Shown here: positions 18,401-63,734 of the stretch, one piece after another
Layout of the letters: each line of letters begins with the position of its first letter
How positions within the stretch are numbered: the stretch's first letter is position 1
Assembly: GCA_024679065.1 (NCBI GenBank)
Contig: JAGIQG010000014.1
Span: forward strand, 72,912,001-72,976,000
Length of the DNA: 64,000 bases
Reading direction: 5' to 3'
Source of the DNA: Sphyrna mokarran
Lineage: Eukaryota
The notes under the pieces: model-generated
What the model saw: the letters and a program-made list of their open reading frames with translations, nothing else
Database searches by the model: none
Told to the model about the DNA's origin: nothing
Program-made: the position numbers and the translations under genes

Positions 18401-21400
18401 ACTGTTAAACTGACACCCAAAAGCACTGGTCCTTTCTAAATCTCACATTCGCCATGGATTAAACATCAGTTGCCATAGTTACCTTTTAATGCAGGAATAA
18501 CATTGGGAGATTTGGCCTCCTTCGGCTTGTTTTCAACTGGCAGGTCAACCATCATTGGCTTCATTGCAATGCTTGAATAGATCATTCTCCCTGTCGCAGA
18601 CACAAATAATGCAGTGGTTTAGCATAACATTACAGTGATACACTTGGCACCAATTCTCCAGAGCAGCTTGGTGTTGATCTGATTTGCGTGCTATATCTAT
18701 CTTCCTCTATGACTGTGGATCTCTTTTCTATTCATTCGTGGAATATGGGCATCGTTGGCTGGGCTAGCATTTATCGCCCATCCTTAGTTGCCCAAGGAGC
18801 AGTTGGGAGTCAACCACATTGCTGTGGCTCTGGAATCACATGTAGGCCAGAGCGGGTCAAGATGGCAGATTTCCATCCCTAAAAGACATTAATGAACCAG
18901 ATGGGTTCTTCCGACAGTGGTCATTAATATATTCTCAATTCCAGATAATTTTTATTACATAGATCATTACAGCACATATAGGCCCTTTGGTCCTCAATGT
19001 TGTGCCGAGTTATGTCTAATCCCAAGATCAAGCTATCCCACTCCCTATCATTCTGGTGTGCTCCATGTACCTATCCAATAACATTGGGAGATTTGGCCTC
19101 CTTTAGCTTGTTTTCATCTGGCAGATTAACCATCATTGGTTTCATCGCAATGCTTGATTGCGGGGGGGAAATGAATGTCAAAGGTGGTGGATGTGGTGAC
19201 AAGCATATAAAGCATATGAAAGATACATACCACCGTGTCTAGGTTGAGGTTGAGGTTTGGGGGGACTGGTTGTTGGTTCTGGCTTCTTCTCCTGAATGAG
19301 TTGAAAGAGAAGCCAGTTTTGGAGCCAAGTTTCAAAGTCCTGTGAACAAAAGATATATCACCAGGTCAGTATCTAATGGCTTGGGTCCTGTGAACTGTTT
19401 TGTGGGTTTATTTTTGTTGGAGGGAGGCATCTCTCAAACCAAGCTCAAACACTGAAGGAGTGAGTTTCCACAAACTTTAAACTTTCGAATGATTGAGAAA
19501 GAGTAGACACAGAGAAGATAGTTCCAATTCTTCAACAGCAGTTGCTGGAGGTGTAGCACTCTGTCCCACAGAAAGGCAATATAGAATAGAAGGATTGTAG
19601 AATTTCTGCAATGCAGAAGGAGGCTATTCAGCCCATCGAGTCTACACCGACAGCAATCCCACCTAGACCCTATCCCCATGTATTCCCATGACACTACGGG
19701 GCAATTTAGCATAGCCAATCCATCTAACCCACACCATCTGCAGAGTTTTGGAGGAAATTGGAGCACCCGGACGAAACTCATGCAGACACGGGGAGAATGT
19801 GCAAACTCCACACAGTCATCCAAGGCCAGAATTGAACGCGTGTACTTGGCACTGTGAGGCAGCAGTGCCAACCACTGAGCCACCGTGCCACCCAGAGGAT
19901 GCCAGCTCAATTATACATCTTCAAAGGTGAATGTAATAGATCTTTGTTTGTCATGAGGTGTCAAGAAATTATGGAGCCACAATGGGATTAAGGCACAGAT
20001 CAGCCATGATATTGCAGAACACACCGGAGGGGCTCAATGGCCTCCTCCAGTTCATGAGATGTGGGAGAAATTAAAACTAAAGAGACCTAGAAACATAGGA
20101 TATTGGAGAAGGAGGCCATTCAGCCCTTTGAACTTGTTCTGCTATTCATATTGATCATGGCTGATCATCCATAGCCTAATCCCACCTTCCCCCCTGCCCC
20201 CAAATCCTTTAATCCACTTCACCCCAACAGCTATACCTAACTACTTCTTGAAAACATATATTTTGACCTCAATTGCTCTCTGGGTAGAGAATTCCACACT
20301 TGCTGCGTGAAGAAATTTCTCCTCATCTCCATCCTAAACTTTCTATCCCGTATCCCAATGTTATAAGCCTGATTCAGGAGACCCTCCATCACCGAGAACA
20401 TCCTTCTATACTGTCTAGTCCTGTTAGAGTGAGAGAAATCAGTCTCCAAGACCAGAAGACCATCAGACATAGGAACAGAATTAGGCCACTCGGTCCATCC
20501 GTCGTTCAATCATGGCTGATATTTTTCTCACCCCTATTCTTCTGCTTTTTCCCCATAACCCTTGGCCCCCTCATTAATCACGAACCTATCTATCTCTGTC
20601 TTAAAGACACCCAATGATCTGGCCTCCACAGCCTTGTGCAGCAAAGAGTTCCACAGATTCACTGTTCTATATCGTTGGGAGCAGTTGAGGTAATGCATTT
20701 AAGAGGAAATTAATAAGATGCATCAGGGAGAAATTAGAAATTATGCTGATGGGATGAGGTGGGAGAAGACTTGTGTGGAGCTTTAACATTAACATGGACC
20801 GGTTGGGCCGAATGGTCTTTTCCTATAGTATAAGTCAATATAATCCTTTGCAACAAAACACTGACCTGCCATTCGGATTCAGTCATGCTCTCTCTCAGTA
20901 GCTTGATGTTGGCAGAGAAGGAACTGTTGAATTCAGGAATCGTCTTGCTTGCGTTCTCCTTCTGCCATTGAAAAAGCAACATCATGTCATCATTGGCTAA
21001 CCGTTTAACCAAAGGTGCGGTCACCCATTCTTCAATGATTTTAAACCTTTTGTTCAGATTTGAGTTACGCAGAAATGGCCTTATGTCTGTCAAGTGCTTT
21101 TCCATCCCTCATGGTTGGTTGGGAAATTGATGCAAATGAACGAAGCCTTCAATAACTTTTGGGCCATTCTTCCCACGTTCAGCTCACAAAAATGGAGACA
21201 TGTTGATGCTATAGAATTATTCGAGCCATCCAGCTTATTCCAGCTATCTGATTAGTCCAGCATGCCCTGACTATCTTTTTCCCGTAACTCCTCAAATATA
21301 ATCTTTCGAAATCATTTTTAAAGACCCTTTATAAACCACTAGATCCACCTCAGCAGGAGGATCATATTTACTACCAAACGCCATTAAGTTGACTACTTGA

Positions 21401-24400
21401 AGAGGCAATGGTCTAGTGGTATTATCGTTAGATTATTAATCCAGAAACTTAGCTAATGTTCTGGGGACCCGCGTTCGAACCCCACCAGATGGTGATATCC
21501 GACTTCAATAAAAAAATCTGGAATTAAGCATCTATTAATGACCATGAAAGCATTGTTGGAAAAACCCATCTGGCTCACTCATGTCCTTTAGGGAAGGAAA
21601 TCTGCCATGCTTACCTGGTCTTACTCCAGAGTCACAGCAATGTGGTTCACTTTCAACTGCCCTCCAAGGGCTACTAGGGATGGGCAATAAATTCTGGCCA
21701 GCCAGCGGCGACCATGCTAAATAATCAAATGAATTTAAAAAAAGAATTTGGCCAGAATTTTATCACTATTCATGCTGATGGGATTTTCCCATCCCTTCGC
21801 AGTGAATGAAGATTTGGCCGGTCATCAAATTCTCTGACCTTGTTGCACCGTGAGTGCGAATGGCCGGAGAGGTCGTGATCTTTGGAGAAGGTGCAGAGGG
21901 GATTTATTAGAAATGTGCTGGGAATAAAGAGCTTCAATTATGTGGAGGGTCTGGAGAAGCTGGGTTGGTCTTCCTTCGAGCAGAGAAGGTTAAAGGGCAG
22001 ATTGAATGGAGGTGGTCAAAATTACAAACAGTTTTGAGAGTATAAAAGGGAAGGAATTGTTTCCTTGAAGCTTTCAAAAATGTCCTACCTTCAGCAGTTC
22101 CTGCACCTGTTCTGGCAAGGTCAAGGGCTTGGCAGGAGTGGGTTTTGGAGCCTGTGGAAAAAACGCACACAGAAAACCCAAATGACATTTTTCTCTGATA
22201 TAATTAACAAGTTGTAACCATCATGAACAGTTCCAAAATCAAAGCTCATCAAAATATGTCAATCTGATCCTGCTTGAAGTGTCACACCAACTCTGGAAGA
22301 ATTTACCAACTTCCACTGGATAACTTCCCTATCTTTGGGTCATCGCATTGTGGGTCCCAGTCCCACACACTCCAGAGACTCAAATGTAAAAGCTAGGCAC
22401 GGTGGCACAGTGGTTAGCACTGCTGCCTCACAGTGCCAGGAACACAGGTTCTATTCCAGCTTCGGGTCGCTGTCTGTGTGGAGTTTGCATGTTCTCCCCA
22501 TGTCTGCGAGGGTTTTCTCCGGGTGTTCCAGTTTCCTCCCGCAGTCCAATAGGTTGATTGGAGATGCTAAATTGTCGTTCGGTGTCAAGGATTAGCAAGG
22601 TAAATATGTGGGATTCCGGGAATTGGGCCAGAGCGGGATTGTGGTCGGTGCAGGCTCAATGGGCCAAATGGCCTCCTTCTCATTGTAGGGATTCTATGAT
22701 TCTCCCAGTACTGGGAAGCATTGCCCCACCAAATGAGATGTGCAATCCATGATATCTGCCTTCTGAGGGGGAGGAATGTTAAAAAATCCCACAACCTCCG
22801 TTGTAGACAAGCAGGATTGTTCTCTGTACAAGCTTTTGCTGGGAATGTGGAATGTTCTGTGCAAAAGCCATCACTTTCCCTCTTTTCATCCATGTGCCAA
22901 TGGCCATGAACTTTAGCCCTCGAGCATCCAACCGGAAACAAACACGGAATTAAGTTAACTGGAAATGGGTGATGGAGTCCAAAGTAGTGGGTTAGACCTC
23001 ATGATTTTAGTCAGAGACAGGAAGAAGTCTTACACCAGGTTAAAGTCGAAAAGGTTTATCATGACCCCTCGGAGCTTTGCTCCTTCATCAGGTGTGTGGA
23101 GACTTGGGTTCACAAACACATTATTTATAGACAGAAACACAAGTTACAAGATAATGTTTGGAATGTGAGTCTTTACAGGTAATCAGGTGCAGACAGTGCG
23201 AGTGGAGAAAGGGATAATCCCAGGTTAAAAAGGTGTGAATTGTCTCAAACCAGAACAGTTAGTAGGATTTTGCAAGCCCAGGGCAAATGGTGGGGGTTAC
23301 ACCTGGCGTGGCATGAACTTGGAGCTGGAGGAGCAGCAGTCGGTTCCTCCCACTCCTCTGTCAGTGTTTGAACGGTGCGGATTGAATTGCGGAAGGCTGC
23401 AACAGCTACCGATCGGATTCCGCACCAGCATGAGGAACAGAAACTTAATTCTCCTCCACCCATTCCCACCCATTCTGTATGGTTCAGCTCATCCAGAAAA
23501 TTCTGGAAAATCTCAGCTGGTCTGACAGGCCCTGCGGACAAAGAGACAGAGCTAATCCAGATGACCCTGCATCAACTCCACTGTCCTCAGGCTTTATTTT
23601 ATGTTTGTATGGAGTGGGCAGAGAGGGTAGATGGAGGGGGTGCTTGGCAGAAGCTTGGTTCAATCGATTGGTGTGGGGTCAGCTGGAGGGAGGATGGGTC
23701 AGATTCATGCTTAATGTTGGATTCGCTTGATAGGGAGGGGAGCTAGGAATTGGGGTGACGAAGAGGGTATAAGGCCATAAAATGTAGGAGCAGAATTAGA
23801 ATTAGGCCATTCAGCCCATCGAGTCGGCTCTGCCACTCAATCATAGGTTTCTCAACCCCATTCTCCCGCCTTTTCCCCGTAACCTTTGATCTCTTTACCA
23901 ATCAAGAACCAATCGATCTCTGTCTCGAGGGTGCTGAGAATTTTGACTGACCCAAGTTGGAAAACAAAGCCAGGATGCCTCACAGACCCCAGGCTGAACA
24001 CAGGGCCTGGTGATGGTCAAGGAGGATGAGGGGAGGGTGGGGTGGGGGGGGGGAGCAGTAACAAGGCGACCAAGGAAAGTAAACGGAGAAGACAGTTTCA
24101 CACTGAGTGATGACTTCCTTCCCTCCTCCTGGCTCCACCACTCCGCCCCCAACCTATTATCCCGCTACTTGGTCCCGCCAATTGCACCAAGTCCCTATTA
24201 GGACATGGAGGAGGGGCCCAATGGAACAGCAGCATAATTTCAACATCCATTCCCTTTGTGCAATACTTTATCCCCTTCTCAGAACATCTCCATATCCAGT
24301 GAGTCTGAAGGAAGATCAGTCACTGTAACCAGGTGGGCCAAAGCCAACAGCCACTGTTGTGCACAGTGAGATCCAAAAAATAGTCACTCTGGTGACCAGC

Positions 24401-33400: not shown

Positions 33401-36400
33401 TAACGTCCTGAATCAAGTAAAATTCTACTGCAATGCTGTTCAAATAAATACTCATTCATTAACCAAAAATATTATAATAGAAATCCGTCAGTCTCAGAAA
33501 ATACAACCAGGTTTTGTGGCTTTCGGGAGCTTTTGGAATCTTTTGTGGATTCCCTTGGTCTCTGAGTTCCTTTTGATTTGGTATCTTTCTCTGGTTAGAT
33601 GGTGCATTTTCTTAGGAAATATATACAGCTATCAGGGTGGAGAGCTGTTCTCTCTCTCTCTCTCTTTCTCTCTATCCCTCTCTCAATTTGAGAGATGGCA
33701 GTTGTTAACCAACAGATTCTCCCTCTTCTCACTCTCTTTTACCTGAGATGAGCTACCAATTTTCCTACAATAGGCTTGGTCTGCTGTTGTCAACAACATC
33801 AAATTCAAATCTTATAGTTTCTTGATAACTGGGTGCCTGCTTTAAATTTATTGGACAAAATTCAAACATTCAAATGCCTGAAGCCTGTTACCAAGGCAAC
33901 CCCGTTGTTGCAGAGTTGGGAACTCTCCAGCATTGAGAGGATTTGAAAGGCCATAGCAAACAAAGTCAAGTGAGGGCAGCATGATGGCACAGTGGTTAAC
34001 ATTACTGCCTCACAATGCCAGGGAGCTAGGTTCAATTCCGGCCTTGGGCTGCTGTCTGTGCGGAGTCCACATGTTCCCCCCAGGAATGCATGTGTTTCCT
34101 CCAAGTGCTCCAGTTTCCTCTCACTGTCCAAAGATATGCAGGTTAGGTGGATTGGCCATGCTAAATTGCCCTTTAATGTCCAATAATATACAGGTTGGGA
34201 GGATTAGTGGGGTAAATGTGCAGGGTTATGGAAATAGGATCTGGGTGAGAAAGTCAGTGCTCAGTTGATGGGCTGAATGGTCCCCCTCAGAACTGTAAGG
34301 ATTCAAACGGAGGAAAATGGGATCAGATTGGAAAGCTGCTTGAGAATTGGTGCAGACACAATGGGATCAAGAGCTTCATTCTGTATTAATCACTCTATAA
34401 TAATATTATTCCCTTCTGCTGTATTTGTTTGAGAAGACCATATGGGGCAGTTCATGAAATAAAGAAATGATGAAATGTCCCAGGGAGAAAATCAAACTGA
34501 ATGTGTTTGCCAATGGGTTAAATTCTGGAACCTCCATCTCATGCCTGCTGCACAAACAGTAGCAATTTGCAAATGGCTTCCACATCCATTTATAGTTGGC
34601 AGAATTCCATTAAGATCCATTACAATAGAAATGGAGGAAGCTTTATGATGTTTTACCAGATCAGAGTCTCAATGGGTGGATGGAATTGTGAATTTGATCC
34701 CAGCAGGGTAATTTTATAAGCTTGACTTGAAAATTTACGCTGGTTGTAGAATCATCTCAGAACCTCGCAGCTTGGAAGGCCATTTGGCCTGCTGTGTCTG
34801 TACTGGCCCTTTGAAAGAGGGATTGATTTAAGTCCAATCTCCAGATGTTTACCCAGTGACAGTCTTCTTGCCCCAGGATGCTTACAGAAGTAATTAAAAT
34901 CTGAGATAACGAAGACTTCCTCTTCTAACTGAGCAATGAAAGGATGAAATATCAGAAGACAGGAAACCATCATGAGTGTGGGCAGAGATGATACGAATGA
35001 TTTTCAAGACAGAGATGAGGTAGAGAGATTCTTCCCACTTAGAAAGGATAGCAGAACTAGAGGACACAGCCTCAAAATAAGGGGAGGGGGGCAGTTTAAA
35101 TTGGAGTTGAGGAGGAACTTCTTCGCTCAAAGGGTAGTGAGTCTCTGGAATTCTCGGCCCATTGAAGTGGTGGAGGCTTCCTCATTGAATATATTTAAGT
35201 CACGGGTAGATAGATTTCTGATAGACAAGGGAATTAAGGGTTATGGGGAGAAAGTGGGAAAGTGGAACTAATCCACTTCAGATCAGCCACGATCTTATTG
35301 AATGGCGGGGCAGGCTCGAGGGGCTGGATGGCCGACTCCTGCTCCTATTTCTTATGTTCTTATGTTCAAAGCTGAATTCACCTTTTTCAAAATTAAGTCG
35401 GGAATTTTTGATTCATTTTGCCAAATAGATTGTGACAAATGTCTCAGTTTTCATCACTTCCATATTGCAGCCACAGACAGAATAGCAGCCATTTTAGAGT
35501 TATAGAAATTCCATTTTAGGTTTGACCAATTCCTCCCCGACAGTGCTCAAACAAAATGGCCAATGCAAGTACCCAAATGACAACAATAACCTTGGGACTG
35601 TGCCAATTGCTTATACATGACTGCTTTAGGCCCTAGAATTATAGAATCCTACAGTGCAGAAGGAGGCCATTCAGCTCACTGAGTCTGCACCAATGACTGT
35701 CCCACCTAGGTCCTATTCCCACAAGTCCACACATTTACCTTAGCTAGTCCCTCTGGCATTAAAGGGCATTTTAGCATGGCCAATCCACCTAACCCACACA
35801 TCTTTGGATTGTGGAAGGAAACCAGAGTACCCGGAGGAAACCCATGCAGACATGGGGAGAATGTGCAAACTCCACACAGACAGTGCCCAAGCCGGGGATT
35901 GAACCGGGGTCCCTGGCGCTGTGAAACAGCAGTGCTAATCTCTGTGCCATCGTGCAGATTTCACGAAAATCGATGCCCAGGCCCAGTTGAAATGATAAGT
36001 GGAATTTTACCACCCCCGCTCATCGCGGGCAAGGGGCAGACAGCAGGAAGGTGCTTTGGTCTCGTGTGGGATTTTACGGTGTCGGGGCGAGCCAGGCCCT
36101 AAAACCGCACCCACGATGTGAAAGAATGCCCTGCCAATAGAAGGGAGCCATTTTGTTTGTCAGGGATTGTGCTCACGTTAGCTCTTGCTGGTTTTCGTGG
36201 CTGCTTTCTGGCTAATAGAGAGGGCAGGTTTGCTCAGTTGGCTGGATGGCTGATTCATAATGCAGAGTGATACCAACGGGGGGGGAGTTTGAGTCCTGTA
36301 CCAGCCGAGGTTATCCATGAGGAGCTTTGCTCCTTGTCTGAGGTGTGGTAACCCAAAAGTTAAAATCACCACCAGTCAGCTCTCTCTCAGAAAGGGAGAG

Positions 36401-53368: not shown

Positions 53369-53455
53369 TGTCACGTGACACTCCAAAAACTCAGCCTCAG
53401 AGAGCACCTTTTGCTTGGTAACTGCTGACTCACACACACACCAGCGACCAACCAG
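53369..53455 (+). promoter_or_regulatory. S-X1-X2-(Y) like module 1 with palindromic E-box
   Basis: TGTCACGTGACA (53369-80); CAGCCTC-15nt-CTTGGTAAC-TGC-TGACTCA-8nt-CCAGC. Confidence 0.6.
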
Positions 53456-53974
53456 CCGTCTCTCAGCTGCTGTGAGTTGATCCTTTTCCTTCCCCCACTC
53501 CCCACACGACTGTGATATCACTGAGTTTGTTTTCTGAAAAAGAAAATTATGGGGGCTTTTGGAGACGCCTTCGAGGATTGAAATACAGGGAAACAACAAT
53601 GCCTCTTCCTAGTTGCTGCCCAGCTCTGATTAATCGGATTACAGGGGCAGGGCTGTGTGCAATGGGTGTTACTGAGTTCAGTCTTTAGTAATGTGCAAAA
53701 AAGAGAAGGAACTGAGATTTGCAGTGCATTGAGAGACAGTAGGGAGTCAAAGGTCAGAACTGTCTCCATCTGTCCTTATGTTCCTGGTCCAAAAGAGGCT
53801 CCACACCCCAAAGCTGTGCAGGTTGGGTGGCTTGGCCATCCTAAATTGCCCCTTAGTGTGAGGGGGACTAGCTAGGCTACATGCATGGGGTTATGGAGAT
53901 AGGGTCTGGGTGGGATTGTAGTCAGTACAGACTCGATGGGTCAAATGGCCTCCTTCTGCACTGTAGGATTCTGC

Positions 53975-54910
53975 GAATCAGAAGCAGGGCTAGGCCACTC
54001 CGCCCCTCAAACCCGTTCCACAATTCTACAAGATCGTGGCTGATCTGTTTGTAACTTTGACTCCACACTCCTGTCGACTCCGATAACATTTTGTGAATCA
54101 AGAATCCATCTAGCTTTGCTTAAAGAATATTTAAAGGCCTTCCTTTGGAGGAAGAGAGTTCCAGTGAGTCACGAGTCTCTGAGGGAAAAAGCTTTGCCTC
54201 ACCTCAGTCTTAATTGGGCCACTCCTTATTTTTAAACAGTGAACCCAAATTCCAGATTCTCTGAAACATCCTCTGCACACCCAGCCTATTACAAAACCCT
54301 CAGGACCTTAAAGGTTTCCATCAAGTCACCTCTTACTTTTCTAAACTCGAATGGATACAAACCTAACCTCTCCAACCTTTCCTCATAAGACAACCCACAC
54401 ATTCCTGGGATTAGTCTGGTAAACCTTGCAGGAATTGTTTCTAACGCACATACATCTTTCCTTTGATAAAGTCGATGGTATTGTACACAATGCTCCAGAT
54501 GTGATCCATCCAAAGCCCTGTGAAATTGAAGCACAGCTTTCCTAGCTTTTACAACTGTGCTAACTTGAGGCCACTCGATGTGGCTAGTAACACACTAAAG
54601 GATTCATTCACTGCGAAGAACTGTGCAATAAAGAATTTAACAACACAGTGATACAGATCTACATCTGGTAACACCCCAATTCCAACTGCAGCCTTCAGTC
54701 CCGGGAATGTAATCCCTCGCTCCCAATTGGGCAGCTTCATGAGCTCCCTCTCCATTTGTTCCAGCCTCAAAGAATTGTCCATTAAAAGGGCCATGCGACC
54801 ATACTAACCAATTCCCCTCACAATAAACATTGTTAGCTTTCCTAATTATTTTCCACATCCGCACTAGGACAGCCAGATCCCTCTGCACCACAAGAGCTCT
54901 GTCATTTCTC
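53975..54910 (-). mobile_element. Degenerate CR1 LINE fragment with internal insertion
   Basis: HLEHCVQY...FTRLIPGM motifs. Confidence 0.8.
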
Positions 54911-55344
54911 ACCAGTTAGGACAACATGGAGGCACAGTGGTGAGCACTACTGCTTCTCAGCCCTAGGACGCAGCTTCAATTCCAGCCTTGGGTCACTGTC
55001 TGCGTGGAGTTTGCAAGTTTTCCCCATGTCGGAGTGGGTTTCCTCCAGTGCTCCAGTTTTCTCCCATCATCCAAAGATGTGGGGGTTAAATTTAGCCACG
55101 CTAAGTTCTCCCTTAGTGTAACCCCAACAGGTGCTGGAGTGTGACAACTAAGGAATTTTTACAGTAACTTCATTGTATTGTTAATCTAAGTCTACTTGTA
55201 AATAATAAAGTAAAATAATAACCTCTTTATTCTTCCTGCCAAAATTGACAATTTGCCCATTCACTTTACGTCCTCTTAATAATTTACTTATCTACCTATC
55301 TTTGAGTCATCAGCAAATTCCGTAACTTTACCTTCGGTCATCAT

Positions 55345-55680
55345 CATAGAATCATAGAAGCCTACAGTGCAGAAAGAGGCCCTTCGGCCCATCGAGTCTG
55401 CACCGACCACAATCCCACCCAGGTCCTACCCACATATCCCTACATAATTTACCCATTAATCCCTCTAATCTCCACATCCCTGAACACAAAGGGGCAATTT
55501 CTTAGCATGGCCAATCAAACCAAACCACACATCTTTGGATTCTAGGAGGACTATCTGGAGGAAATCCATGCAGACATGACGAGAATATACAAACTCCACA
55601 CAGTGACCCAAGCTGGGAATTGAACCCAGGACCCTGAGCTGTGAAGCAGCAGTGCTAACCACTGTGCTACCATGCCACCC
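55345..55680 (-). mobile_element. V-SINE (HE1-like)
   Basis: Full-length reverse copy with (tctatgat)n tail. Confidence 0.9.
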
Positions 55681-55870
55681 AATCCAGCCAATCATTTATA
55701 TACATCCTGTCCCTTTAACCCCACACATTTACACAGACCAGTGCAACTAACCCACACATCTTTGGAATGTGGGAGGAAACTAGAGCACCCGGAGGAGACC
55801 CACACAGACACGGGGAGAATGTACAGACTCCACACAGACAGTGACCCAAGTTACAAAAGAAAGCTGTGCA

Positions 55871-56360
55871 TCTGACAGTGCAGCACTCCCTCAGTACTGA
55901 CCCTCTGACAATGCAGCACTCCCTCAGTACTGACCCTCTGATAGTGCAGCACTCCCTCAGTACTGACCCTCTGACAGTGCAGCACTCCCTCATACTGACC
56001 CTCTGACAGTGCAGCACGCCCTCAGTACTGACCCTCTGACAGTGCGACACTCCCTCGGTACTGACCCTCTGACAGTGCGACACTCCCTCAGTACTGATCC
56101 TCTGACAATGCAGCACTCCCTCAGTACTGACCCTCTGACAGTGCGACACTCCCTCAGTACTGACCCTCTGACAGTGCAGCACTCCCTCAGTACTGACCCT
56201 CTGACAGTGCAGCACTCCCTCAGTACTGACCCTCTGACAGTGCAGCATTCCCTCAGTACTGACCCTCTGACAGTGCAGCACTCCCTCAGTACTGACCCTC
56301 TGACAGTGCAGCACTCCCTCAGTACTGACCCTCTGACAGTGCAGCACTTCCTCAGTACTG
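55871..56360 (+). repeat. 33-bp minisatellite, about 15 copies (TCTGACAGTGCAGCACTCCCTCAGTACTGACCC)
   Basis: Units start at 55871, 55904, 55937, 55970, 56002 ... 56332; the unit matches a DeuSINE segment in reverse. Confidence 0.97.
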
Positions 56361-56470
56361 CATTGTGATTGTCAGCTGCAGATTTCAAGAACTGAAATGG
56401 GAGTGACTTCTGGGCCTGCTGTGTTGAACTGTAATCTACATTGTCCAGTTCTCATTCACTGTCAATGAAT

Positions 56471-56534
56471 CTACAAAACACGGGCTCAACTGCAAACCTT
56501 TCCCCGACAACTAGTGAGTCACTGGGCGGCCAAT
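56471..56534 (+). promoter_or_regulatory. S-X1-X2-Y like module 2
   Basis: CTACAAAACA-CGGGCTC-15nt-CCCGACAAC-TAG-TGAGTCA-8nt-CCAAT. Confidence 0.62.
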
Positions 56535-58194
56535 AGTTATTCTCACATTGGGATTCCTGTCCTCATTATTGGTTTGTCTCGGAGCAGATGTGAAACTGAG
56601 CAAGTTTACACAAGAACATGTTAGTCTCTAGGTTTGGGGCTCTGTGCCAATACTTATCTCTGACACTGTCTCTTTTCAGTTGCCTGCTATTCAGTAAAAT
56701 AGTTTGGAATTAGTTGGTTACAGAAATAGGAACAGGAAGAGGCATTCAGCCCCTTTTCAGACTGTTACATCATACCGTTAGATTAAAGCTGATCTGAGTT
56801 TTAACTGCATTTACAGACCTTAGTATCTGCCCCCACAAAACTCGTCTCAAAGTTGGTTTGGAAATGTCTACGTGAAAACTGACTCCCGCAACTTGTCTGG
56901 GGAGAGAGTTCCAATTTTCATTACCCTTCGTGTGAGGGAGTTCATCTGACATCATCTCTGAGTGACCTGGCTTGAATTTTAAATGTTTTCTTTCCTTTGT
57001 CTGCGTTGATTGGCCACACTAAATTTCCCCTTAGTGTCCAAAGATGTGTGAATCAAGGGGATTCACCATGGGAAATATGTGGGCTTATGGGGATAGGGTG
57101 GGCATTAGCTTGGAAAAGATACTTTGCTGGAGAGTTAGCCCAATGGGCCGAATGGCCTCCTTTGGCACAGTAGAGATTCTATAATTAAATAGACAGAATG
57201 ATGCAGTGTGAGTGTCACTGGGCTAGGTCAGTGCTCTGAGGACATGGGTTCAAACCCTCCCCCTGCGGTGCCTGATGGAATTTATTTTTTAATTAACAAA
57301 TCAAACCTTTAACATAAAGCTGGAACACCAACATGATGCAAACTTTCATTGATTGATGTAAAAACCCATCTGGTTCACTGTGTGCTAAGGAAATCTGCCA
57401 TCCTAACCTGGTCTGGCTTATGAGTGACTCCAGACCCACAGCGATGTGGTCATCTTCTGAAAGGGCCAGTCATTTACTTAGCTTAAGGGAAATTAAGCTT
57501 TGTCCAACTTCTTTTTTGACCATTTGATGGGCAACACGACAGCCCAGTGACTATCGCTGTGCTGTGCAGATACATGGATGACACAGCCTGTGTCTGTGGG
57601 AGTTTGCACATTCTCCCCATGCTTGCATGGGTTTTCTCTGGGTGCTCCGGTTTCCTCCCATATCCCAAAGACATGCTCTTCGGCTAATTGGCAAAGCAAA
57701 TTCTCCCTAAATTGTCTCAGATTTGGTTTTTAATCCATAGATCTATAAACATAGATGGGGATCACGGGTAGAGGTGAGAACATCGGGGTGGCAGCACGGG
57801 CTCGTTGGGCCGAAGGGCCTGTTTCCCGTGCTGTTTTGTCCTTTGTTCTTTGTTCTTTGAAATTAGGAATGGGGCAACAGATGCTGGCCTTGTCAGCGAG
57901 GAATACATTCTATGATGAAGATAAGATAAACATCGGAATATTCAAGCCTTTGTGAATAAGGATACACTCTCCAGTTTCAGAGTGAAGGGTGTCCATATTT
58001 TTCCTGCTGTGTTGTGGTTCTTTCTCCTTGGTACTAAAGGTTGGTAAATTCAGTTCTCACTCCTTGGGAAAGGATTTTATGACCTCCCTCTTCCCGAAAC
58101 TGTAAAATCCTGCCCAAGGTGAATGGACCTTTCTGAGAATCCATTCCACTTGCCCGCCATGATTCCCGCGGTGGATGGGACAGTGAAATCCTGG

Positions 58195-58570
58195 TTCTTG
58201 AGCACACACACTAGAGCAGTAGTGAGGGAGTTGCTGCATTGTCAGAGGTGCCTTCAAATGAGATGACAAACTGCGACCATGTCGGTCCTCTAGAGTGGAT
58301 GTAAAAGATCCCACAGTGCTAGTACAGAGACCAGCGGGGAGACGGGTGGGGGATTCTCCCCAATATGTTGGCCCAAAATCTATCTCCCAGCTAGCATTGC
58401 TGAATCGGACCATTTATCACTGTGTGGTTCATGGGACATTGCTAAGTTGGCTGTATTCTCTACGTAACAACCGTGTTTCCCCTTTGGAGAATATTCCACT
58501 CACTGCCCCATTCTCTGGGATATCCTGAACTTGTGGAAGACGTGCTGGAATTGCAGGTTCATTCTATTTA
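58195..58570 (+). mobile_element. DeuSINE (SacSINE1-like) remnant
   Basis: gctgcattgtcagaggtgcc...ggatgtaaaagatccca core; related fragments near 3070-3240, 45860-46160 and 51660-51850. Confidence 0.65.
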
Positions 58571-59059
58571 ATCCCTCTGGTCTGTGTTGAGTTAGTTGAA
58601 CTCAACCAGGGAAATTGTGGAGTACAAAGGGATAAAAGATCCTAATATTGAACAGCAGCTTGGGGAAAAATAAGGCGCGTTTGCCCCAATTATCAAACAC
58701 CAAGACGGATAGAAAGGTGTTTGATGGCTGGCAGAGACAGAATGGGCCAAACGCCCTCTTTTTAGTGCTGTAAAATCTGTGACAAAGATCAAATAGTTTG
58801 CTATGACTATTCAGGATGGTGTCAGACTTGGCGGGAGGAGCGGGACAGGAGATTTAGAGATGATCAGCTGAGTTTCTTTTGCCTTATTTCTGAATGTAAT
58901 GTGAGCATCATTGACAAAGCCAGCGTTTGTTGCCCGAAGCCTAATTGCCCTGAGAAGGTGATCCACCCTCTTGAACAACCAAGAACCAGCTGAGTAGGGT
59001 AGGGGCCAGGACATTGCTCTGGGATTTGGAAGTGCGGAGGTACAGTAGGAGTTCTCATG

Positions 59060-59740
59060 TATCAGTCACTGAAAGTAAGCAGGCAGTAAAGAAGGCAAAT
59101 GGTATGTTCGCCTTCATAGTGAAGGGATTTGCTTTCAGGGATAGAGATGTTTTACTGCAATTCTATCTAACATTGGTAAGGTCATGCCTGGGGTATTATG
59201 TGCAATTTTGGTGTCCTTATCTGAGGAAGGATGTCCTTGCTATAGAGGAAGTATAGCGGAGGTTTACCAGGCTGATTCCTGGGATGGCAGGTCTGTCACA
59301 TGAGGAGAGACTAAGTCGTTACAATTATATTCACTGGAGTTTAGAAGAGTGAGAGAGAATCTCATGAAACTTATAAAATTCTAACAGGGGTTAGGTAGAG
59401 TAGAGTCAGAAAGGATGTTGCCCATAGTAGGGGAGTCCAGAACTAGGGGTCATAGTTTGAGGATAAGGGATAAACCATTTAGAACTGGGCGAGGAGAAAT
59501 TTATTCACCCAGAGAGTGGTGAATATGTGGAATTCACTCCCACAGAAAGTAGTTGAAGCCAAAATGTTGTCTGATTTCAAGAAACACTTAGATATAGCTG
59601 TTGGGGCTAAAGGGATCAAAGGATATGGGGAGAAGGGGGGGATCAGGATATTGAGTTTAATGATCAGTTATGATCATAATGAATGGTTGGAGTGGGCCTG
59701 GTGGGCCAAATGGCCTATTCCTGCTTCTAGTTTCTATGGA
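59060..59740 (+). mobile_element. CR1 LINE 3' fragment
   Basis: AVKKANGM...VQFWCPYLRKDV motifs. Confidence 0.88.
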
Positions 59741-61006
59741 AAATTCTCCATCCACATGGAGTGTCATCTACTCAAGAGGAATTGGACTCAGGTGGAAAAC
59801 GTTGCTGAAAAACCATACCATCAGCATGCCACTTCTCCCCCATCCTGGGTCAGATGTACACACGTGAAATATGGCCACACTACACGAGGTGTTCGCCACC
59901 CATGGAAAGGCGGCCCCACACAAAGGCAGCGCTTTCAGACACTGAAAGAGGAACTTGCTTCCTTTCCAAGTTTCACATCCATGTCCCAGAGCCACAAAGG
60001 GTTTTATTTATTTTCCCTTGCAGAATGTTGCTCACTGCTGTGCTGTGAGTGAAGGTGGCCCTGATTACAACAGCAACAACTTGGCACTTACATGGCCCCC
60101 TTTGGTGCCCTGAGGCACTCCACAGCAGCAACACAAAACAAACGCTACTGAGTCTCACACATGGAGGTTATTAGGTCAGACCAGCTTGGTCAAAGAGTTA
60201 GGTTCTAAGCTCAATGAGTTAGATTCTAAGCAAGCTCGTCAACATTAGACATGGTCTCCAGTGCTGGAACAACTAGAGAGAAGCCAGAATTAGAGGAGAG
60301 CAGGGGATGGGAGGAAATTGTAGAGATAGAGAGAGGTAAGACTATGGAGGGATTTTCCACATAGGAACAGATGGAATCAGAGCCACTCTGCCCCTCGAGC
60401 CTGTTCTATCCCACAATAAAGCCATGGTTCATCAGTTTACATTTCAAATTCCGCATTCCCATCCAACACCGGATAACATTTCATTCCCTAACAAGAATCT
60501 ATCACCCTCCACCTTAAATATTTCCAGTGATCCCGCCCTCCACTGCCTTCTGAGGCAGAGAGCTCCAAATTGCACAACCGTCTGAGAGAAAACAAAAAAT
60601 GATTTTCTCCGTCCGAAGCAAGGAAGAGAATTTTAAAATCAGGGGATTGCCTCACTGGGAGCCACTGTAGGTGACCGAGCTTGGGAGAGGAGGAGGGGGA
60701 GGGTGATAGGGGAAAGGGATTTGGTGTTCAGACAGAGGCAGCAGAAACTTGGCCTCAGGTTTGTGGGAGGCAGAATGTGGGAGACCTGTCTAGGGATAAT
60801 CATGGCGTGGCTGAAGGTCGACAGCAGATGGGATGAGGCTGGAGTAAAGTTGAGCGATATTCTGGGTGTTGGTCAGCTAAGGTGCAGACGTGATTTGGGA
60901 ATGAAGGGGTATAGAAAACTGATTTAAAATAGGGATCATGAGCCTTGGGAGTCCCTGGGAAGTGTGTAAATAGATGATGATATTGATGTACTTGTTTTTA
61001 TCCTAC

Positions 61007-61470
61007 AGGCGCTTTGGTCCACCTTGTTGTCTAACGAGGGGCATACACGCGATGGGTCGTGAGAGGGCTGCACTTGGATTTTTTTCGAGAGTATCCTAGT
61101 GCTTCACGTCGTTAGTGTACGCTTGACCTGGACCATTTGATGGGCAACACAACAGCGCAGTGACTATCGCTGTGCTTTGCAGGTACATGGATTTGGGCCT
61201 GTGTCTGTGGGAGTTTGCACATTCTCCCCGTGCTTGCGTGGGTTTTCTCTGGGTGCTTGAGTTTTCTCCCACATCCCAAAGATGTGCTCCTAGGCTAATT
61301 GGCAAAACAAATTCTCCCTAAATTGTCTCAAATTTGGTTTTTAATCCATAGACCTATAAACATAGACAGGGATCACGGGTAGTGGTGGGAACATCAGGGT
61401 GGCGGCGCGAGCTTGTTGGGCCAAAGGGCCTGTTTCCCGTGCTGTTTTGTTCTTTGATCTTTGTTCTATG
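61007..61470 (+). mobile_element. V-domain SINE variant with non-tRNA head (other copies 57518-57858 +, 47556-47810 -)
   Basis: Shared gaccatttgatgggcaacac...V-domain...ttggtttttaatccataga...gggccaaagggcctgtttccc. Confidence 0.75.
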
Positions 61471-61539
61471 TGGTCAGAATCTCATCTCAGGATCACATAT
61501 GACACCAATATTGCAGACAGTTTGGTGTGGACTTAATGG

Positions 61540-62235
61540 GTGGCACAGTGGTTAGCACTGTTACTTCACAGCTCCAGGGACCTGGGTTCGATTCCCAGCT
61601 TGGGTCACTGTCTGTGTGGAGTTTACACATTCTCCTTGTGTCTGCCTGGGTTTCCTCCGGGTGCTCCAGTTTCCTCCCGCAGTCCAAAGAAGTACAGGTT
61701 GGGTTCATTGGCCATGCTTAAATTGCACCTTAGTATCCTGAGGTGTGTAGGTTAGAGGGATTAGTGGGTAAAATGTGGAGGGATATGGGTGTAGGGCCTG
61801 GCTGGGCTTGTGGTCAGTGCAGACTCAATGGGCCAAATAACCTCTCTCTGTACTGTAGGGTTTCTATGATTCTACAACTTACATGGTTGCCAGGGAGAAA
61901 CTGGAATGGCACAACGGTTAGCACTGCTGTCTCACAGAGCCAGGGTCCCAGGTTCAATTCTGCCCTCCGATCACTGTCTGTGTGGAGCTTGCACATTCTC
62001 CTCGTGTCTACGTGGGTTTCCTCTGGATGCTCCAGTTTCCTCCCACAGTCCAAAGATGTGCAGGTTAGGTAGATTGGCCATGCTAAATTGGCCCTTAATG
62101 TTCCAAGATGTGTGAGTTAAGGGGATTAGCCACGGTAAATGTGTGGGGATGGGGCAGTGGAGGTGACCTGGGTAAAATAGAGAGTCGGTGCAGACTTGAT
62201 GGGCCGAATGGCCTCTTCTGGGCTGTCAGGGTTTT
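61540..62235 (+). mobile_element. Two tandem V-SINE (HE1-like) copies
   Basis: Two successive head/V-domain/tail units. Confidence 0.88.
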
Positions 62236-62436
62236 GATGGTTTTATGAAGGTGGAGTTGGGAGCAGGGACTGAAAACATTGCCTTCGATCTTCCCGGTAT
62301 TTGATTGGAGGAAATGTCTGTTCGTCTGCCTATTGGATAAGCAATGTGACGAATTAGAGGCCTCGGTGGGATCAAGAGTTCTGAGAAAGAGTTGGGTATC
62401 TTCTGCTTTTGTGTGGAATGTTGGTTTAAGTTTCCA

Positions 62437-62513
62437 TCACCTGATTCTGCAAAACACAACTTCCAGGAGAGATCTCTACCCGGCAACTAATGAGTCACAA
62501 AATAACCAATCAG
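62437..62513 (+). promoter_or_regulatory. S-X1-X2-Y like module 3
   Basis: TCACCTG...AAAACA-CAACTTC-15nt-CCCGGCAAC-TAA-TGAGTCA-8nt-CCAATCAG. Confidence 0.68.
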
Positions 62514-63418
62514 TGTTGAGCATTTGGACCTTGAGTGCCCAAGATTTGGTGCTGGTGCCACCTGCCTGTAACTGCTGGAGCTGCAGCCAGAGCCAAACAA
62601 CAACAACTTGCATCTGGATTGCACCTTTAGCACCACATAGCCCAATCTACTGCACAAGAATGTAATGAAACAAAATAGGACAGCATTAGAAAGGTGTGCA
62701 AAGAGGTTTTAAGGAGCAGCCTAAGGATAGAGAGATAAAAGGCAGAATTTTCCCATCTCACCCATCGTGGGAATCGTAGCATGGATTATGCTAAGTCATG
62801 GACCATTGACCTCGGGTATGATTCTCCAGTCTTGGGACGAATGCAGCCGGAAAAATCCCATGCAGAAAGTTGCAGAGATTTAGGAATTTCGGAGTTTTGC
62901 ATCCAGGCAACTTGAAGACTTGGCCGTCAGCAATGCAGCAATTAGAATGGAGGATGGTCATTAAGCTAGGGTTGGAAGAACCAAATGTCTCAGATGTTTG
63001 TGGGGCTGAAGGAGACTAGAGAGAAGCCATGGAGTGATTCTGGAATTAAGAGTCTACTGATAACCATGAAACTACTGAATATTGTCATAAAAACCCACCT
63101 GTCCTGCAGGGAAGGAAATCTGCCATCCTTACCTGGTCTGGCCTACGTATAACTACAGAGCCACAGCAATGTGATTGACTCTGAAATGGAGGGCAATTAG
63201 TGTGAGGGCGTCGCTGGCAAATGAAGGAGATTTTTTTACTATCTGTAGAGAAGTTTTTGTTTGAATTGCCACGTGGGAAAAGGTGAGAGATGCTGGAGGG
63301 TGGGTGAGATGTGCCTATGGATTAGTAGCTCTTAGAGAGCTGGCTTGGACACAGTGGACCGAATGGCCTCCTTCTTGTGGTGGAACCATGCAATGATTCA
63401 ATGTTGACTTAGTTTCTG

Positions 63419-63494
63419 TCACCTGGTTCTACAAAACACAACCTCAAGCACAGACCTCTACCCGGCAACTAGTGAGTCACACAATAGCCAATCA
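63419..63494 (+). promoter_or_regulatory. S-X1-X2-Y like module 4
   Basis: TCACCTG...AAAACA-CAACCTC-15nt-CCCGGCAAC-TAG-TGAGTCA-8nt-CCAATCA. Confidence 0.68.
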
Positions 63495-63734
63495 CTGGGA
63501 ATGCCAAGAATTTGATGTTGGTGCCATCTGCCTGCAGCTGAGAGCATTGCAGCTGCAGCCAAACAACAACAACAACTTGACAGTCTTTAAACACACCAAC
63601 ACTTCCCAGTCCACTTCCCAGGAACATGAATATGGCAGTCATGAGGAAATATTAGGACAGGCGACCAAAAGCTTGTTCAAAGATGAAGGTTTTAAACAGC
63701 ATCTTAAAGGAGGAGAGAAAGAACAGCCTCAAAT

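What the first reader, a model, noticed from the sequence alone, without database searches (positions are those of the whole stretch)
53369..63494. Four dispersed S-X1-X2-Y-like modules upstream of CD74: a candidate RFX/CIITA enhancer cluster
Seen: at 53392, 56481, 62457 and 63439 the same rigid layout recurs in non-TE sequence. It is a 7-nt S-like box (CAGCCTC/CGGGCTC/CAACTTC/CAACCTC), exactly 15 variable nt, an X1/RFX-like site (CTTGGTAAC/CCCGACAAC/CCCGGCAAC x2), 3 nt, TGA(G/C)TCA, exactly 8 variable nt, then CCAAT (CCAGC in module 1). Spacer sequence diverges while motifs and spacing hold, which suggests selection. Known: the S-X-Y module bound by RFX/CREB-ATF/NF-Y recruits CIITA at MHC II and CD74, S-X spacing is strict, and distal S'-Y' enhancers exist in mammals. 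Inference: a locus-control-like array 14.6-24.7 kb upstream of CD74, inverted relative to its transcription; more modules may lie beyond the window.
Basis: partly seen in the sequence, partly recalled or inferred. Interest (0 to 1): 0.85.

Follow-up and report, generated by a model that had tools for sequence, protein, structure and literature searches.

The report
Shark S-X-Y-like enhancer cluster near CD74
Four copies of a compact DNA module resembling the switch that turns on MHC class II genes in mammals lie 15-25 kb upstream of a shark invariant-chain (CD74) gene; they look conserved, but their function is untested.

Summary
Four + strand modules sit at 53392, 56481, 62457 and 63439. Each has identical spacing: S-like 7-mer, 15 nt, RFX-like X1, 3 nt, TGA(G/C)TCA, 8 nt, CCAAT (CCAGC in M1). 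They stand far above background. Leave-one-out PWM scores are 21-46 bits against 8-11 for the best other site, and about 0.0009 exact X1-X2 matches are expected by chance.

The four are paralogues from local duplication, not independent events. M3 and M4 are a 190-bp tandem duplicate, and all four share an extra 5' block. Box positions are better kept than spacers (M3/M4 27 of 28 against 19 of 26). The module has no indels, while the flank has many.

CD74 lies on the - strand with its ATG at 38815, so the modules are 14.6-24.7 kb upstream and inverted. I saw no S-X-Y in CD74's own 385-bp unique promoter.

The module differs from the mammalian one. It is 54 bp rather than 65-70 bp, and Y is a direct CCAAT placed closer to X2.

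First readers noted similar "orphan X-Y modules" near class II beta genes on other pieces of this genome. Those notes are unchecked.

Verdict: a plausible variant of a known enhancer type, with function unproven.

The parts
53369..53445 (+). Module M1: 5' block (TGTCACGTG... CAAAAAC), S-like CAGCCTC at 53392, X1 CTTGGTAAC, X2 TGACTCA, CCAGC in place of Y. It is the weakest copy.
   Evidence: Leave-one-out PWM 21.1 bits against a background best of 8.0.
56460..56534 (+). Module M2: 5' block, S-like CGGGCTC at 56481, X1 CCCGACAAC, X2 TGAGTCA, Y CCAAT at 56530. Two inverted CCAAT (ATTGG) follow at 56547-56551 and 56568-56572.
   Evidence: Leave-one-out 33.7 bits. 81% identical to M4 over 53 nt.
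62435..62510 (+). Module M3: 5' block with CACCTG, S-like CAACTTC at 62457, X1 CCCGGCAAC, X2 TGAGTCA, Y CCAATCAG.
   Evidence: Leave-one-out 41.5 bits.
63417..63492 (+). Module M4: 5' block with CACCTG, S-like CAACCTC at 63439, X1 CCCGGCAAC, X2 TGAGTCA, Y CCAATCAC.
   Evidence: Leave-one-out 45.9 bits.
62417..62607 (+). Duplicated unit carrying M3. Its partner is 63400-63573, which carries M4.
   Evidence: blastn: 74% identity over 193 columns. Families D15 and D18. 0 gaps in the 54-nt module against 10 gap events in the next 100 nt.
63400..63573 (+). Duplicated unit carrying M4.
38717..38815 (-). CD74 (invariant chain) exon 1, with the ATG at 38815. This is the presumed target gene. Further exons run down to 14227.
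   Evidence: tblastn with shark CD74 proteins. Exon 1 is 97% identical to P0156, named by its source as Mustelus asterias.
38816..39200 (-). Unique CD74 proximal upstream region. It holds GGGACTTTCC (38978-38969), ACTTCCTC (38952-38945) and a lone GGCAAC (39104-39099), but no S-X-Y module. Repeats start at about 39201.

Best explanation
The four modules are paralogous copies of one cis-regulatory element. They arose by local, same-orientation duplication upstream of CD74 and have been kept under purifying selection on the motif cores and on their spacing.

Each copy is a compact shark version of the MHC 'enhanceosome' platform. It has a pyrimidine tract plus an RFX-type X1 half-site, a bZIP site (TGASTCA, AP-1/CREB-ATF class) 3 nt further on, and an NF-Y CCAAT box 8 nt after that. 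An S-like box sits exactly 15 nt upstream, and an E-box-like / CAAAAC block lies 5' of it.

Inferred mechanism: RFX, a bZIP factor and NF-Y bind cooperatively and recruit a CIITA-type NLR co-activator. The array then acts at a distance as redundant or additive enhancers on the nearest antigen-presentation gene, CD74. No promoter-proximal S-X-Y was seen at that gene.

Shown here: the sequences, their rarity, their common descent and the pattern of conservation. Inferred: factor binding, CIITA dependence, enhancer activity and the target gene.
For: 1. Exact layout in 4 of 4 copies. There is no other match in 64 kb on either strand, even with 2 mismatches. Leave-one-out scores are 21-46 bits against 8-11 for background.
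2. Box positions are better kept than spacers in all 6 pairs. Examples: M3/M4 27/28 against 19/26; M2/M3 23/28 against 9/26; M1/M2 19/28 against 8/26. Fisher p ranges from 0.0004 to 0.019.
3. Spacing is kept. M3/M4 and M2/M4 align with 0 gaps over the 54 nt, while the 100 nt after M3/M4 needs 10 gap events.
4. Homology between M1/M2 and M3/M4 survives only in the core of about 80 nt; the flanks are unalignable.
5. All four lie within 10.1 kb in the same orientation. Under random placement the chance is about 0.0017, which fits local duplication rather than transposition.
6. The module tiles have no other copy in the window, although 135 of 248 tiles of 38.8-63.9 kb do.
7. The order and the pyrimidine tract 5' of X match the mammalian description (PMC2278383, Fig. 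6 legend read). The S-X spacing of 15 compares with 16 in mouse MHC-I modules (PMC4374748).
8. CD74/Ii is a classical CIITA target with extra S-Y enhancers in mammals, and S-Y modules work in both orientations (PMC1802633, PMC2278383, PMC7866136).
9. CIITA and NLRC5 orthologues are reported in whale shark (PMC8455134).
10. No coding exon or Pfam domain was found in 53-64 kb that a promoter would serve (0 families for 10 of 10 ORFs tested). No CD74 exon relic lies there either.
Against:
- The genome-wide copy number is unknown, so a low-copy repeat family is not excluded.
- The box boundaries were drawn after seeing the sequences, so the box-against-spacer test is biased towards significance. 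The six pairs are also not independent.
- Y is a direct CCAAT, not the inverted CCAAT of mammals (PMC7866136). The X2-Y gap is 8 nt, and the whole module is 54 bp rather than 65-70 bp (PMC2278383).
- In human data, CIITA-responsive sites have a narrow XY length (PMC4381081).
- M1 lacks a CCAAT.
- In humans, AP-1 plus CCAAT at precise spacing is a mark of LTR repeats (PMC4889920).
- The CD74 transcription start is not mapped.
- The gene to the right of the window is unknown and could be the real target.
Confidence: 0.5

Rival explanations
1. The modules are remnants of a low-copy repeat, for example the U3 part of an old LTR, or of a locally amplified segment. The motif cores look conserved only by chance, by gene conversion or by mutational heterogeneity. 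They have no regulatory role today.
For: - The region is packed with transposon fragments.
- M4 starts right after the 3' end of a repeat, and a CR1 3' fragment follows at 63723.
- M3 and M4 are plain duplicates.
- In human data, precisely spaced AP-1 + CCAAT pairs are typical of LTRs (PMC4889920, passage read).
- From memory, the stretch just 3' of M3/M4 looks like the start of an abundant shark repeat. The window could not confirm this.
Against: - No other copy exists in 64 kb, although other repeat families recur many times.
- The chance of all four being clustered and co-oriented is about 0.0017.
- Similarity among M1, M2 and M3/M4 is confined to the 80-nt core instead of extending over a repeat body.
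- Box positions are kept better than spacers, with zero indels in the module against 10 gap events in the next 100 nt.
- No LTR termini or target-site duplications were recognised by eye.
Confidence: 0.2
2. The modules are promoter-type S-X-Y elements for + strand transcription. They could be alternative or duplicated promoters (or their relics) of an unannotated non-coding transcript, or of a gene that starts beyond the right end of the window. CD74 would then not be their target.
For: - S to Y points along the + strand, away from CD74.
- In mammals S-Y modules typically lie less than 200 bp upstream of a start site (PMC2278383).
- M4 is only 0.5 kb from the window end.
- From memory, extragenic transcription starts at distal S-Y modules in mammals.
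Against: - There is no ATG-initiated open exon within about 200 nt after any module (read directly).
- 0 Pfam families in 10 of 10 ORFs tested in 53-64 kb.
- Transposon fragments follow M3 and M4 closely.
- No TATA-like element follows the Y boxes.
- Four promoters within 10 kb would be unusual.
Confidence: 0.18
3. The modules are functional enhancers, but not of the CIITA type. One option is a generic RFX/AP-1/NF-Y (or NF-E2/MARE in M1) composite. Another is a platform for NLRC5 rather than CIITA.
For: - X2 is a perfect AP-1 heptamer rather than a CRE-like site.
- M1 reads TGCTGACTCAC.
- The orientation and spacing of Y differ from CIITA-responsive mammalian modules (PMC7866136, PMC4381081).
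- In mouse the S box decides between NLRC5 and CIITA (PMC4374748), and the shark S box cannot be classified.
Against: The position next to CD74, a class II pathway gene. The strict S-X spacing of 15 nt and the pyrimidine tract are features of the MHC module (PMC2278383, PMC4374748).
Confidence: 0.1
4. Chance co-occurrence of short motifs.
For: Each motif alone is common. For example, there are 12 TGASTCA sites in the window.
Against: About 8.8e-4 exact X1-N3-X2 matches are expected against 4 seen. The leave-one-out gap exceeds 10 bits. The copies also share flanking homology.
Confidence: 0.02

Closest known systems
Mammalian W/S-X-X2-Y (S-Y) module of MHC class II, Ii/CD74, DM and DO promoters
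   Same: The order S, X1, X2, Y. A pyrimidine tract 5' of X1. An RFX-type GYAAC core followed 3 nt later by a TRE/CRE-like heptamer. A CCAAT-type Y box. Rigid spacing with freely diverging spacers. Linkage to CD74.
   Different: 54 bp rather than 65-70 bp (PMC2278383). Y is a direct, not inverted, CCAAT (PMC7866136), and lies 8 nt after X2. X2 is a perfect AP-1 site. The modules lie 14.6-24.7 kb from the gene and inverted, not within 200 bp of the start site. No binding or CIITA data exist.
Distal S'-Y' / XL enhancers of the human MHC-II locus and the extra S-Y enhancers in the Ii gene (ref. 20 of PMC1802633; PMC7866136)
   Same: S-Y-like modules away from promoters, several per locus, active in either orientation, associated with class II pathway genes including Ii.
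   Different: The mammalian elements were validated by ChIP and reporter assays, and these were not. Here there are four tandemly arisen paralogues in one orientation. The original paper (Krawczyk 2004) was not read; I saw only its citation.
NLRC5-type S-X-Y module of MHC class I and B2m promoters (PMC4374748)
   Same: The same S-X-Y architecture. The S-X distance (16 bp) nearly equals the 15 nt here.
   Different: Y lies 20-22 bp from X there. The S box that gives NLRC5 specificity could not be compared, because the logos are in figures. The gene context here is class II pathway.
AP-1 + CCAAT modules of human LTR repeats bound by FOS and NF-Y (PMC4889920)
   Same: A TGASTCA and a CCAAT at fixed short spacing.
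   Different: Those are high-copy LTRs. Here no repeat body, termini or further copies were seen in the window, and an RFX site and an S box at fixed spacing are added.

Membership tests
MHC W/S-X-X2-Y (S-Y) module | Four boxes in the order S, X1, X2, Y on one strand | tested here: met
   4 of 4 modules. M1 has CCAGC at the Y position.
MHC W/S-X-X2-Y (S-Y) module | RFX-type X1 core with a pyrimidine-rich tract at its 5' end (PMC2278383, Fig. 6 legend) | tested here: met
   GGCAAC, GACAAC or GGTAAC, preceded by cctctaccc, tctctaccc, cctttcccc or ccttttgctt. The match to the published X1 consensus itself is recalled, not computed. The XY matrix is in a supplement that is closed.
MHC W/S-X-X2-Y (S-Y) module | X2: a CRE/TRE-like heptamer directly after X1 | tested here: met
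   TGAGTCA or TGACTCA 3 nt after X1 in 4 of 4. That the mammalian gap is also 3 nt is recalled.
MHC W/S-X-X2-Y (S-Y) module | Fixed S-X spacing (16 bp in PMC4374748) | tested here: met
   Exactly 15 nt in 4 of 4. The one-base difference depends on where the boxes are drawn.
MHC W/S-X-X2-Y (S-Y) module | Y box is an inverted CCAAT (PMC7866136) | tested here: not met
   A direct CCAAT on the S-to-Y strand in M2-M4, and none in M1. M2 alone has inverted copies further on, at 56547 and 56568.
MHC W/S-X-X2-Y (S-Y) module | X-Y distance of 20-22 bp (PMC4374748) and whole module of 65-70 bp (PMC2278383) | tested here: not met
   8 nt from X2 to CCAAT; the module is 54 bp. Whether helical phase is kept cannot be decided from the text sources.
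MHC W/S-X-X2-Y (S-Y) module | Cooperative binding of RFX, CREB and NF-Y, and recruitment of CIITA | not testable with these tools
   Needs EMSA, ChIP and reporter assays.
Promoter-type S-Y module | Lies less than 200 bp upstream of a transcription start (PMC2278383) | tested here: inconclusive
   No coding first exon follows any module.
Distal S'-Y' enhancer | S-Y-like module away from a promoter in a class II pathway locus | tested here: met
   14.6-24.7 kb upstream of the CD74 ATG.
Distal S'-Y' enhancer | Enhancer activity dependent on RFX and CIITA | not testable with these tools
Transposable element / LTR | Many dispersed copies sharing a repeat body and termini | tested here: inconclusive
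   There are no further copies in 64 kb, and similarity is limited to the core. Genome-wide count not possible.

The most novel reading that the evidence does not exclude
In this shark the invariant-chain gene carries no promoter-proximal S-X-Y at all. Its class II-type (CIITA/RFX) control comes only from an inverted, four-fold distal array of a compact module in which the NF-Y site is flipped and sits about one helical turn closer to X2 than in mammals. If the same compact module also marks the 'orphan X-Y' sites that first readers noted near class II beta genes of this genome, cartilaginous fish would show a different, possibly ancestral, geometry of the MHC enhanceosome. They would also show a locus-control-type organisation dating back to the origin of jawed vertebrates.
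Probability: 0.2. Interest if true: 0.75.

Novelty: new variant of a known kind. Interest (0 to 1): 0.52.

Why it matters
The S-X-Y enhanceosome and CIITA are the textbook example of a dedicated transcriptional switch, but it has been worked out almost only in mammals. My three library searches listed no paper describing S-X-Y modules in cartilaginous fish.

A conserved but geometrically different module next to shark CD74 would give a direct handle on two questions. The first is how old the RFX/NF-Y/CIITA platform is. The second is which of its features (order, spacing, Y orientation) are truly essential. Simple reporter swaps in existing CIITA- and RFX5-deficient human cell lines could test this.

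If the modules turn out to be a repeat, the finding is of little interest.

Tried and rejected
1. Coding gene downstream of the modules. There is no ATG-initiated exon after any Y box. Pfam gave 0 families for 10 of 10 ORFs tested in 53-64 kb; I chose these 10 by eye as not obviously transposon-derived from the list, and did not test the other ORFs of the region. tblastn with 4 shark CD74 proteins found no CD74 exon relic there.

2. S-X-Y at CD74's own promoter or introns. Regex scans and the PWM scan found none. There is only a lone GGCAAC at 39104-39099, plus palindromic RFX-like sites at 33887-33900 and 18469-18482.

3. Further weak modules in the window: none scored above 8-11 bits.

4. 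Repeat membership inside the window. blastn of the four blocks and the 100-nt tile map showed no copy other than the modules themselves.

6. Cross-species loci.
- The transmembrane-exon ORF found nothing.
- The thyroglobulin-exon ORF searched against the representatives gave P0095.
- P0095 gave 19 proteins, of which 17 were shark, ray or skate CD74.
- I searched CD74 exon by exon and did not join the exons into a spliced model.

7. Earlier scan notes gave titles only, which cannot be checked.

8. Literature.
- Passages read: PMC1802633, PMC2278383, PMC4381081, PMC7866136, PMC4374748, PMC4889920, PMC8455134.
- Reference list only: PMC2192141.
- Not held: PMC359998.
- Seen only as citations, not read: Krawczyk 2004 and Vilen 1991.
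- The XY-box matrix of PMC4381081 and the logos of PMC4374748 are in supplements or figures that I could not see. They would allow proper scoring of the shark modules.

9. LTR hallmarks (termini, target duplications) were looked for by eye only, and none were recognised.

Full report
**What is there**

The window is vertebrate DNA with 44% G+C and a CpG observed/expected ratio of 0.30. It is full of SINE and CR1-type fragments.

The alignment of the four shows that conservation starts earlier. A block reading TGTCAC(C/G)TG ... CAAAAC, about 23 nt long, lies 5' of S. This gives an E-box-like CACCTG in M3 and M4 and CACGTG in M1. The conserved core is therefore about 80 nt long.

**Is it more than chance?**

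- The X1-N3-X2 pattern has 4 matches in the window, all exact and all on the + strand. No further match appears with up to 2 mismatches.
- About 8.8e-4 exact matches are expected from base composition.
- I built a PWM from three modules and scored the fourth. The scores were 21.1 (M1), 33.7 (M2), 41.5 (M3) and 45.9 bits (M4). The best non-module site on either strand scored 8-11 bits.
- Chance is excluded, and the window holds no further, weaker module.

**The four are relatives, not independent events**

- M3 and M4 sit in a tandem duplicate, 62417-62607 against 63400-63573, 74% identical.
- M2 is 81% identical to M4 over 53 nt.
- M1 shares the 5' block and the boxes, but its S-X spacer is near random (5 of 15 identical to M4, by my count).
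- Outside the core, M1 and M2 cannot be aligned to M3/M4.
- All four lie within 10.1 kb in one orientation. For four randomly placed and oriented copies in 64 kb this has a chance of about 0.0017.
- This points to local duplication rather than transposition.

**Signs of constraint**

In every one of the six pairs the 28 box positions are more alike than the 26 spacer positions:

| Pair | Boxes | Spacers |
|---|---|---|
| M1/M2 | 19/28 | 8/26 |
| M1/M3 | 20/28 | 10/26 |
| M1/M4 | 21/28 | 10/26 |
| M2/M3 | 23/28 | 9/26 |
| M2/M4 | 24/28 | 14/26 |
| M3/M4 | 27/28 | 19/26 |

- Between the young pair M3/M4, spacer identity is 73%, about that of the whole duplicated unit (74%). The boxes are 96% identical.
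- The 54-nt module aligns without any gap in M3/M4 and in M2/M4. The 100 nt that follow M3/M4 need 10 gap events.
- Caveats: the box limits were chosen after looking at the data, the pairs share history, and gene conversion could mimic part of this.

**Context**

- tblastn with shark CD74 proteins (obtained) maps CD74 on the - strand. The exons are at 38815-38717, 28249-28094, 25453-25364, 22157-22089, 20964-20866, 19342-19205, 18591-18484 and 14424-14227.
- The closest protein is one its source names Mustelus asterias (97% in exon 1), so the window is probably from a carcharhiniform shark.
- I searched CD74 exon by exon and did not join the exons.
- The modules start 14,577 to 24,624 bp upstream of the ATG and are inverted relative to CD74.
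- At least 87 of 144 100-nt tiles between the ATG and M1 have another copy in the window. Much of the distance is therefore transposon insertion.
- The module tiles have no other copy except one another.
- In 53-64 kb I found no coding exon. No ATG-initiated exon follows any Y box. Ten of ten tested ORFs gave no Pfam family. There is no CD74 relic.
- The unique 385 bp upstream of the CD74 ATG holds GGGACTTTCC, ACTTCCTC and a lone GGCAAC, but no S-X-Y by regex or PWM.
- The CD74 start site is not mapped, so an upstream non-coding exon cannot be excluded.

**Comparison with what is known**

- Reviews and primary papers describe the W/S-X-X2-Y module as four boxes in fixed order, orientation and spacing. 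RFX binds X, CREB binds X2 and NF-Y binds Y, and Y is an inverted CCAAT (PMC7866136, passages read).
- The module is 65-70 bp long, usually lies less than 200 bp from the start site, and has a pyrimidine tract at the 5' end of X (PMC2278383, passages read).
- In mouse MHC-I modules, S lies 16 bp and Y lies 20-22 bp from X (PMC4374748, passages read).
- Human class II XY boxes span 47-49 bp, and CIITA-responsive sites keep helical periodicity (PMC4381081, passages read).
- Extra S-Y enhancers were found in the Ii gene and the MHC-II locus, and a transplanted S-Y module works in both orientations (PMC1802633, passages read).
- The shark module shares the order, the pyrimidine tract, the X1 core, the X1-X2 arrangement and the S-X spacing.
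- It differs in three ways: it is 54 bp long, Y lies only 8 nt after X2, and Y is a direct CCAAT. By my recollection of the HLA-DRA promoter the pentamer there lies about 18 nt after X2, so the shark spacing would be one helical turn shorter. This is recalled and was not checked.
- CIITA and NLRC5 orthologues are reported in whale shark (PMC8455134, passage read).
- Three library searches listed no paper on S-X-Y modules in sharks.

**A serious rival**

- In human data, precisely spaced AP-1 and CCAAT sites are a hallmark of LTR repeats bound by FOS and NF-Y (PMC4889920, passage read).
- The modules sit between transposon fragments. From memory, the stretch right after M3/M4 also looks like the start of a common shark repeat. 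The window has no second copy to confirm this.
- Against a repeat origin: similarity among the four is limited to the core, there are no other copies in 64 kb, and the copies are clustered and co-oriented.
- Even if the modules are repeat-derived, the core-only conservation would suggest exaptation.

**What could not be done**

- Notes by first readers of this scan mention 'orphan X-Y modules' near class II beta genes, a class II promoter with CCAAT arrays and an MHC class I S-X-Y on other pieces of this genome. I saw only titles and could not test them.

**Verdict**

- The best reading (confidence about 0.5) is a locally duplicated, selectively maintained cluster of compact S-X-Y-like regulatory modules. 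They probably act as distal enhancers of CD74 through RFX, a bZIP factor, NF-Y and a CIITA-type co-activator.
- It works like the mammalian S-Y module but fails two of that module's defining features, Y orientation and X-Y distance. I therefore file it as a new variant of a known kind, not as a member.
- Rivals: a functionless repeat or duplicate (0.2), promoter-type elements for + strand transcription or another gene (0.18), an enhancer that is not CIITA-dependent (0.1), and chance (0.02).

Noticed in passing
window 55796-56426: A minisatellite with a 33-bp period (14 copies in register, up to 94% alike). It ends about 35 nt before the conserved block of M2.
   Followed up: no
window 38945-39104 (- strand): The CD74 proximal upstream region carries GGGACTTTCC (NF-kB-like, 38978-38969), ACTTCCTC (Ets/PU.1-like, 38952-38945) and a lone GGCAAC (39104-39099), but no S-X-Y. 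Repeats begin at about 39201.
   Followed up: partly
window 33887-33900 and 18469-18482: Two palindromic RFX-type sites, GTTGCCTTGGTAAC and GTAACTATGGCAAC. The first is in CD74 intron 1. The second directly abuts the exon at 18484-18591.
   Followed up: no
window 18484-18591 and 19077-19157 (- strand): Two copies of the CD74 exon that aligns to residues 211-246 of the Mustelus CD74, at 86% and 85% identity. This agrees with the scan's notes on a duplicated CLIP-like cassette exon.
   Followed up: partly
window 56547-56551 and 56568-56572: Two inverted CCAAT boxes (ATTGG) follow the direct CCAAT of M2. This is the only module with Y boxes in the mammalian orientation.
   Followed up: no
window 53423-53433: In M1 the X2 heptamer is embedded in TGCTGACTCAC, which reads like an NF-E2/Maf recognition element (recalled).
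   Followed up: no
window 23853-23906 (+) and 44727-44780 (-): The best background PWM hits (7.5 and 2.3 bits) resemble each other and look like copies of one repeat family. They are not modules.
   Followed up: no
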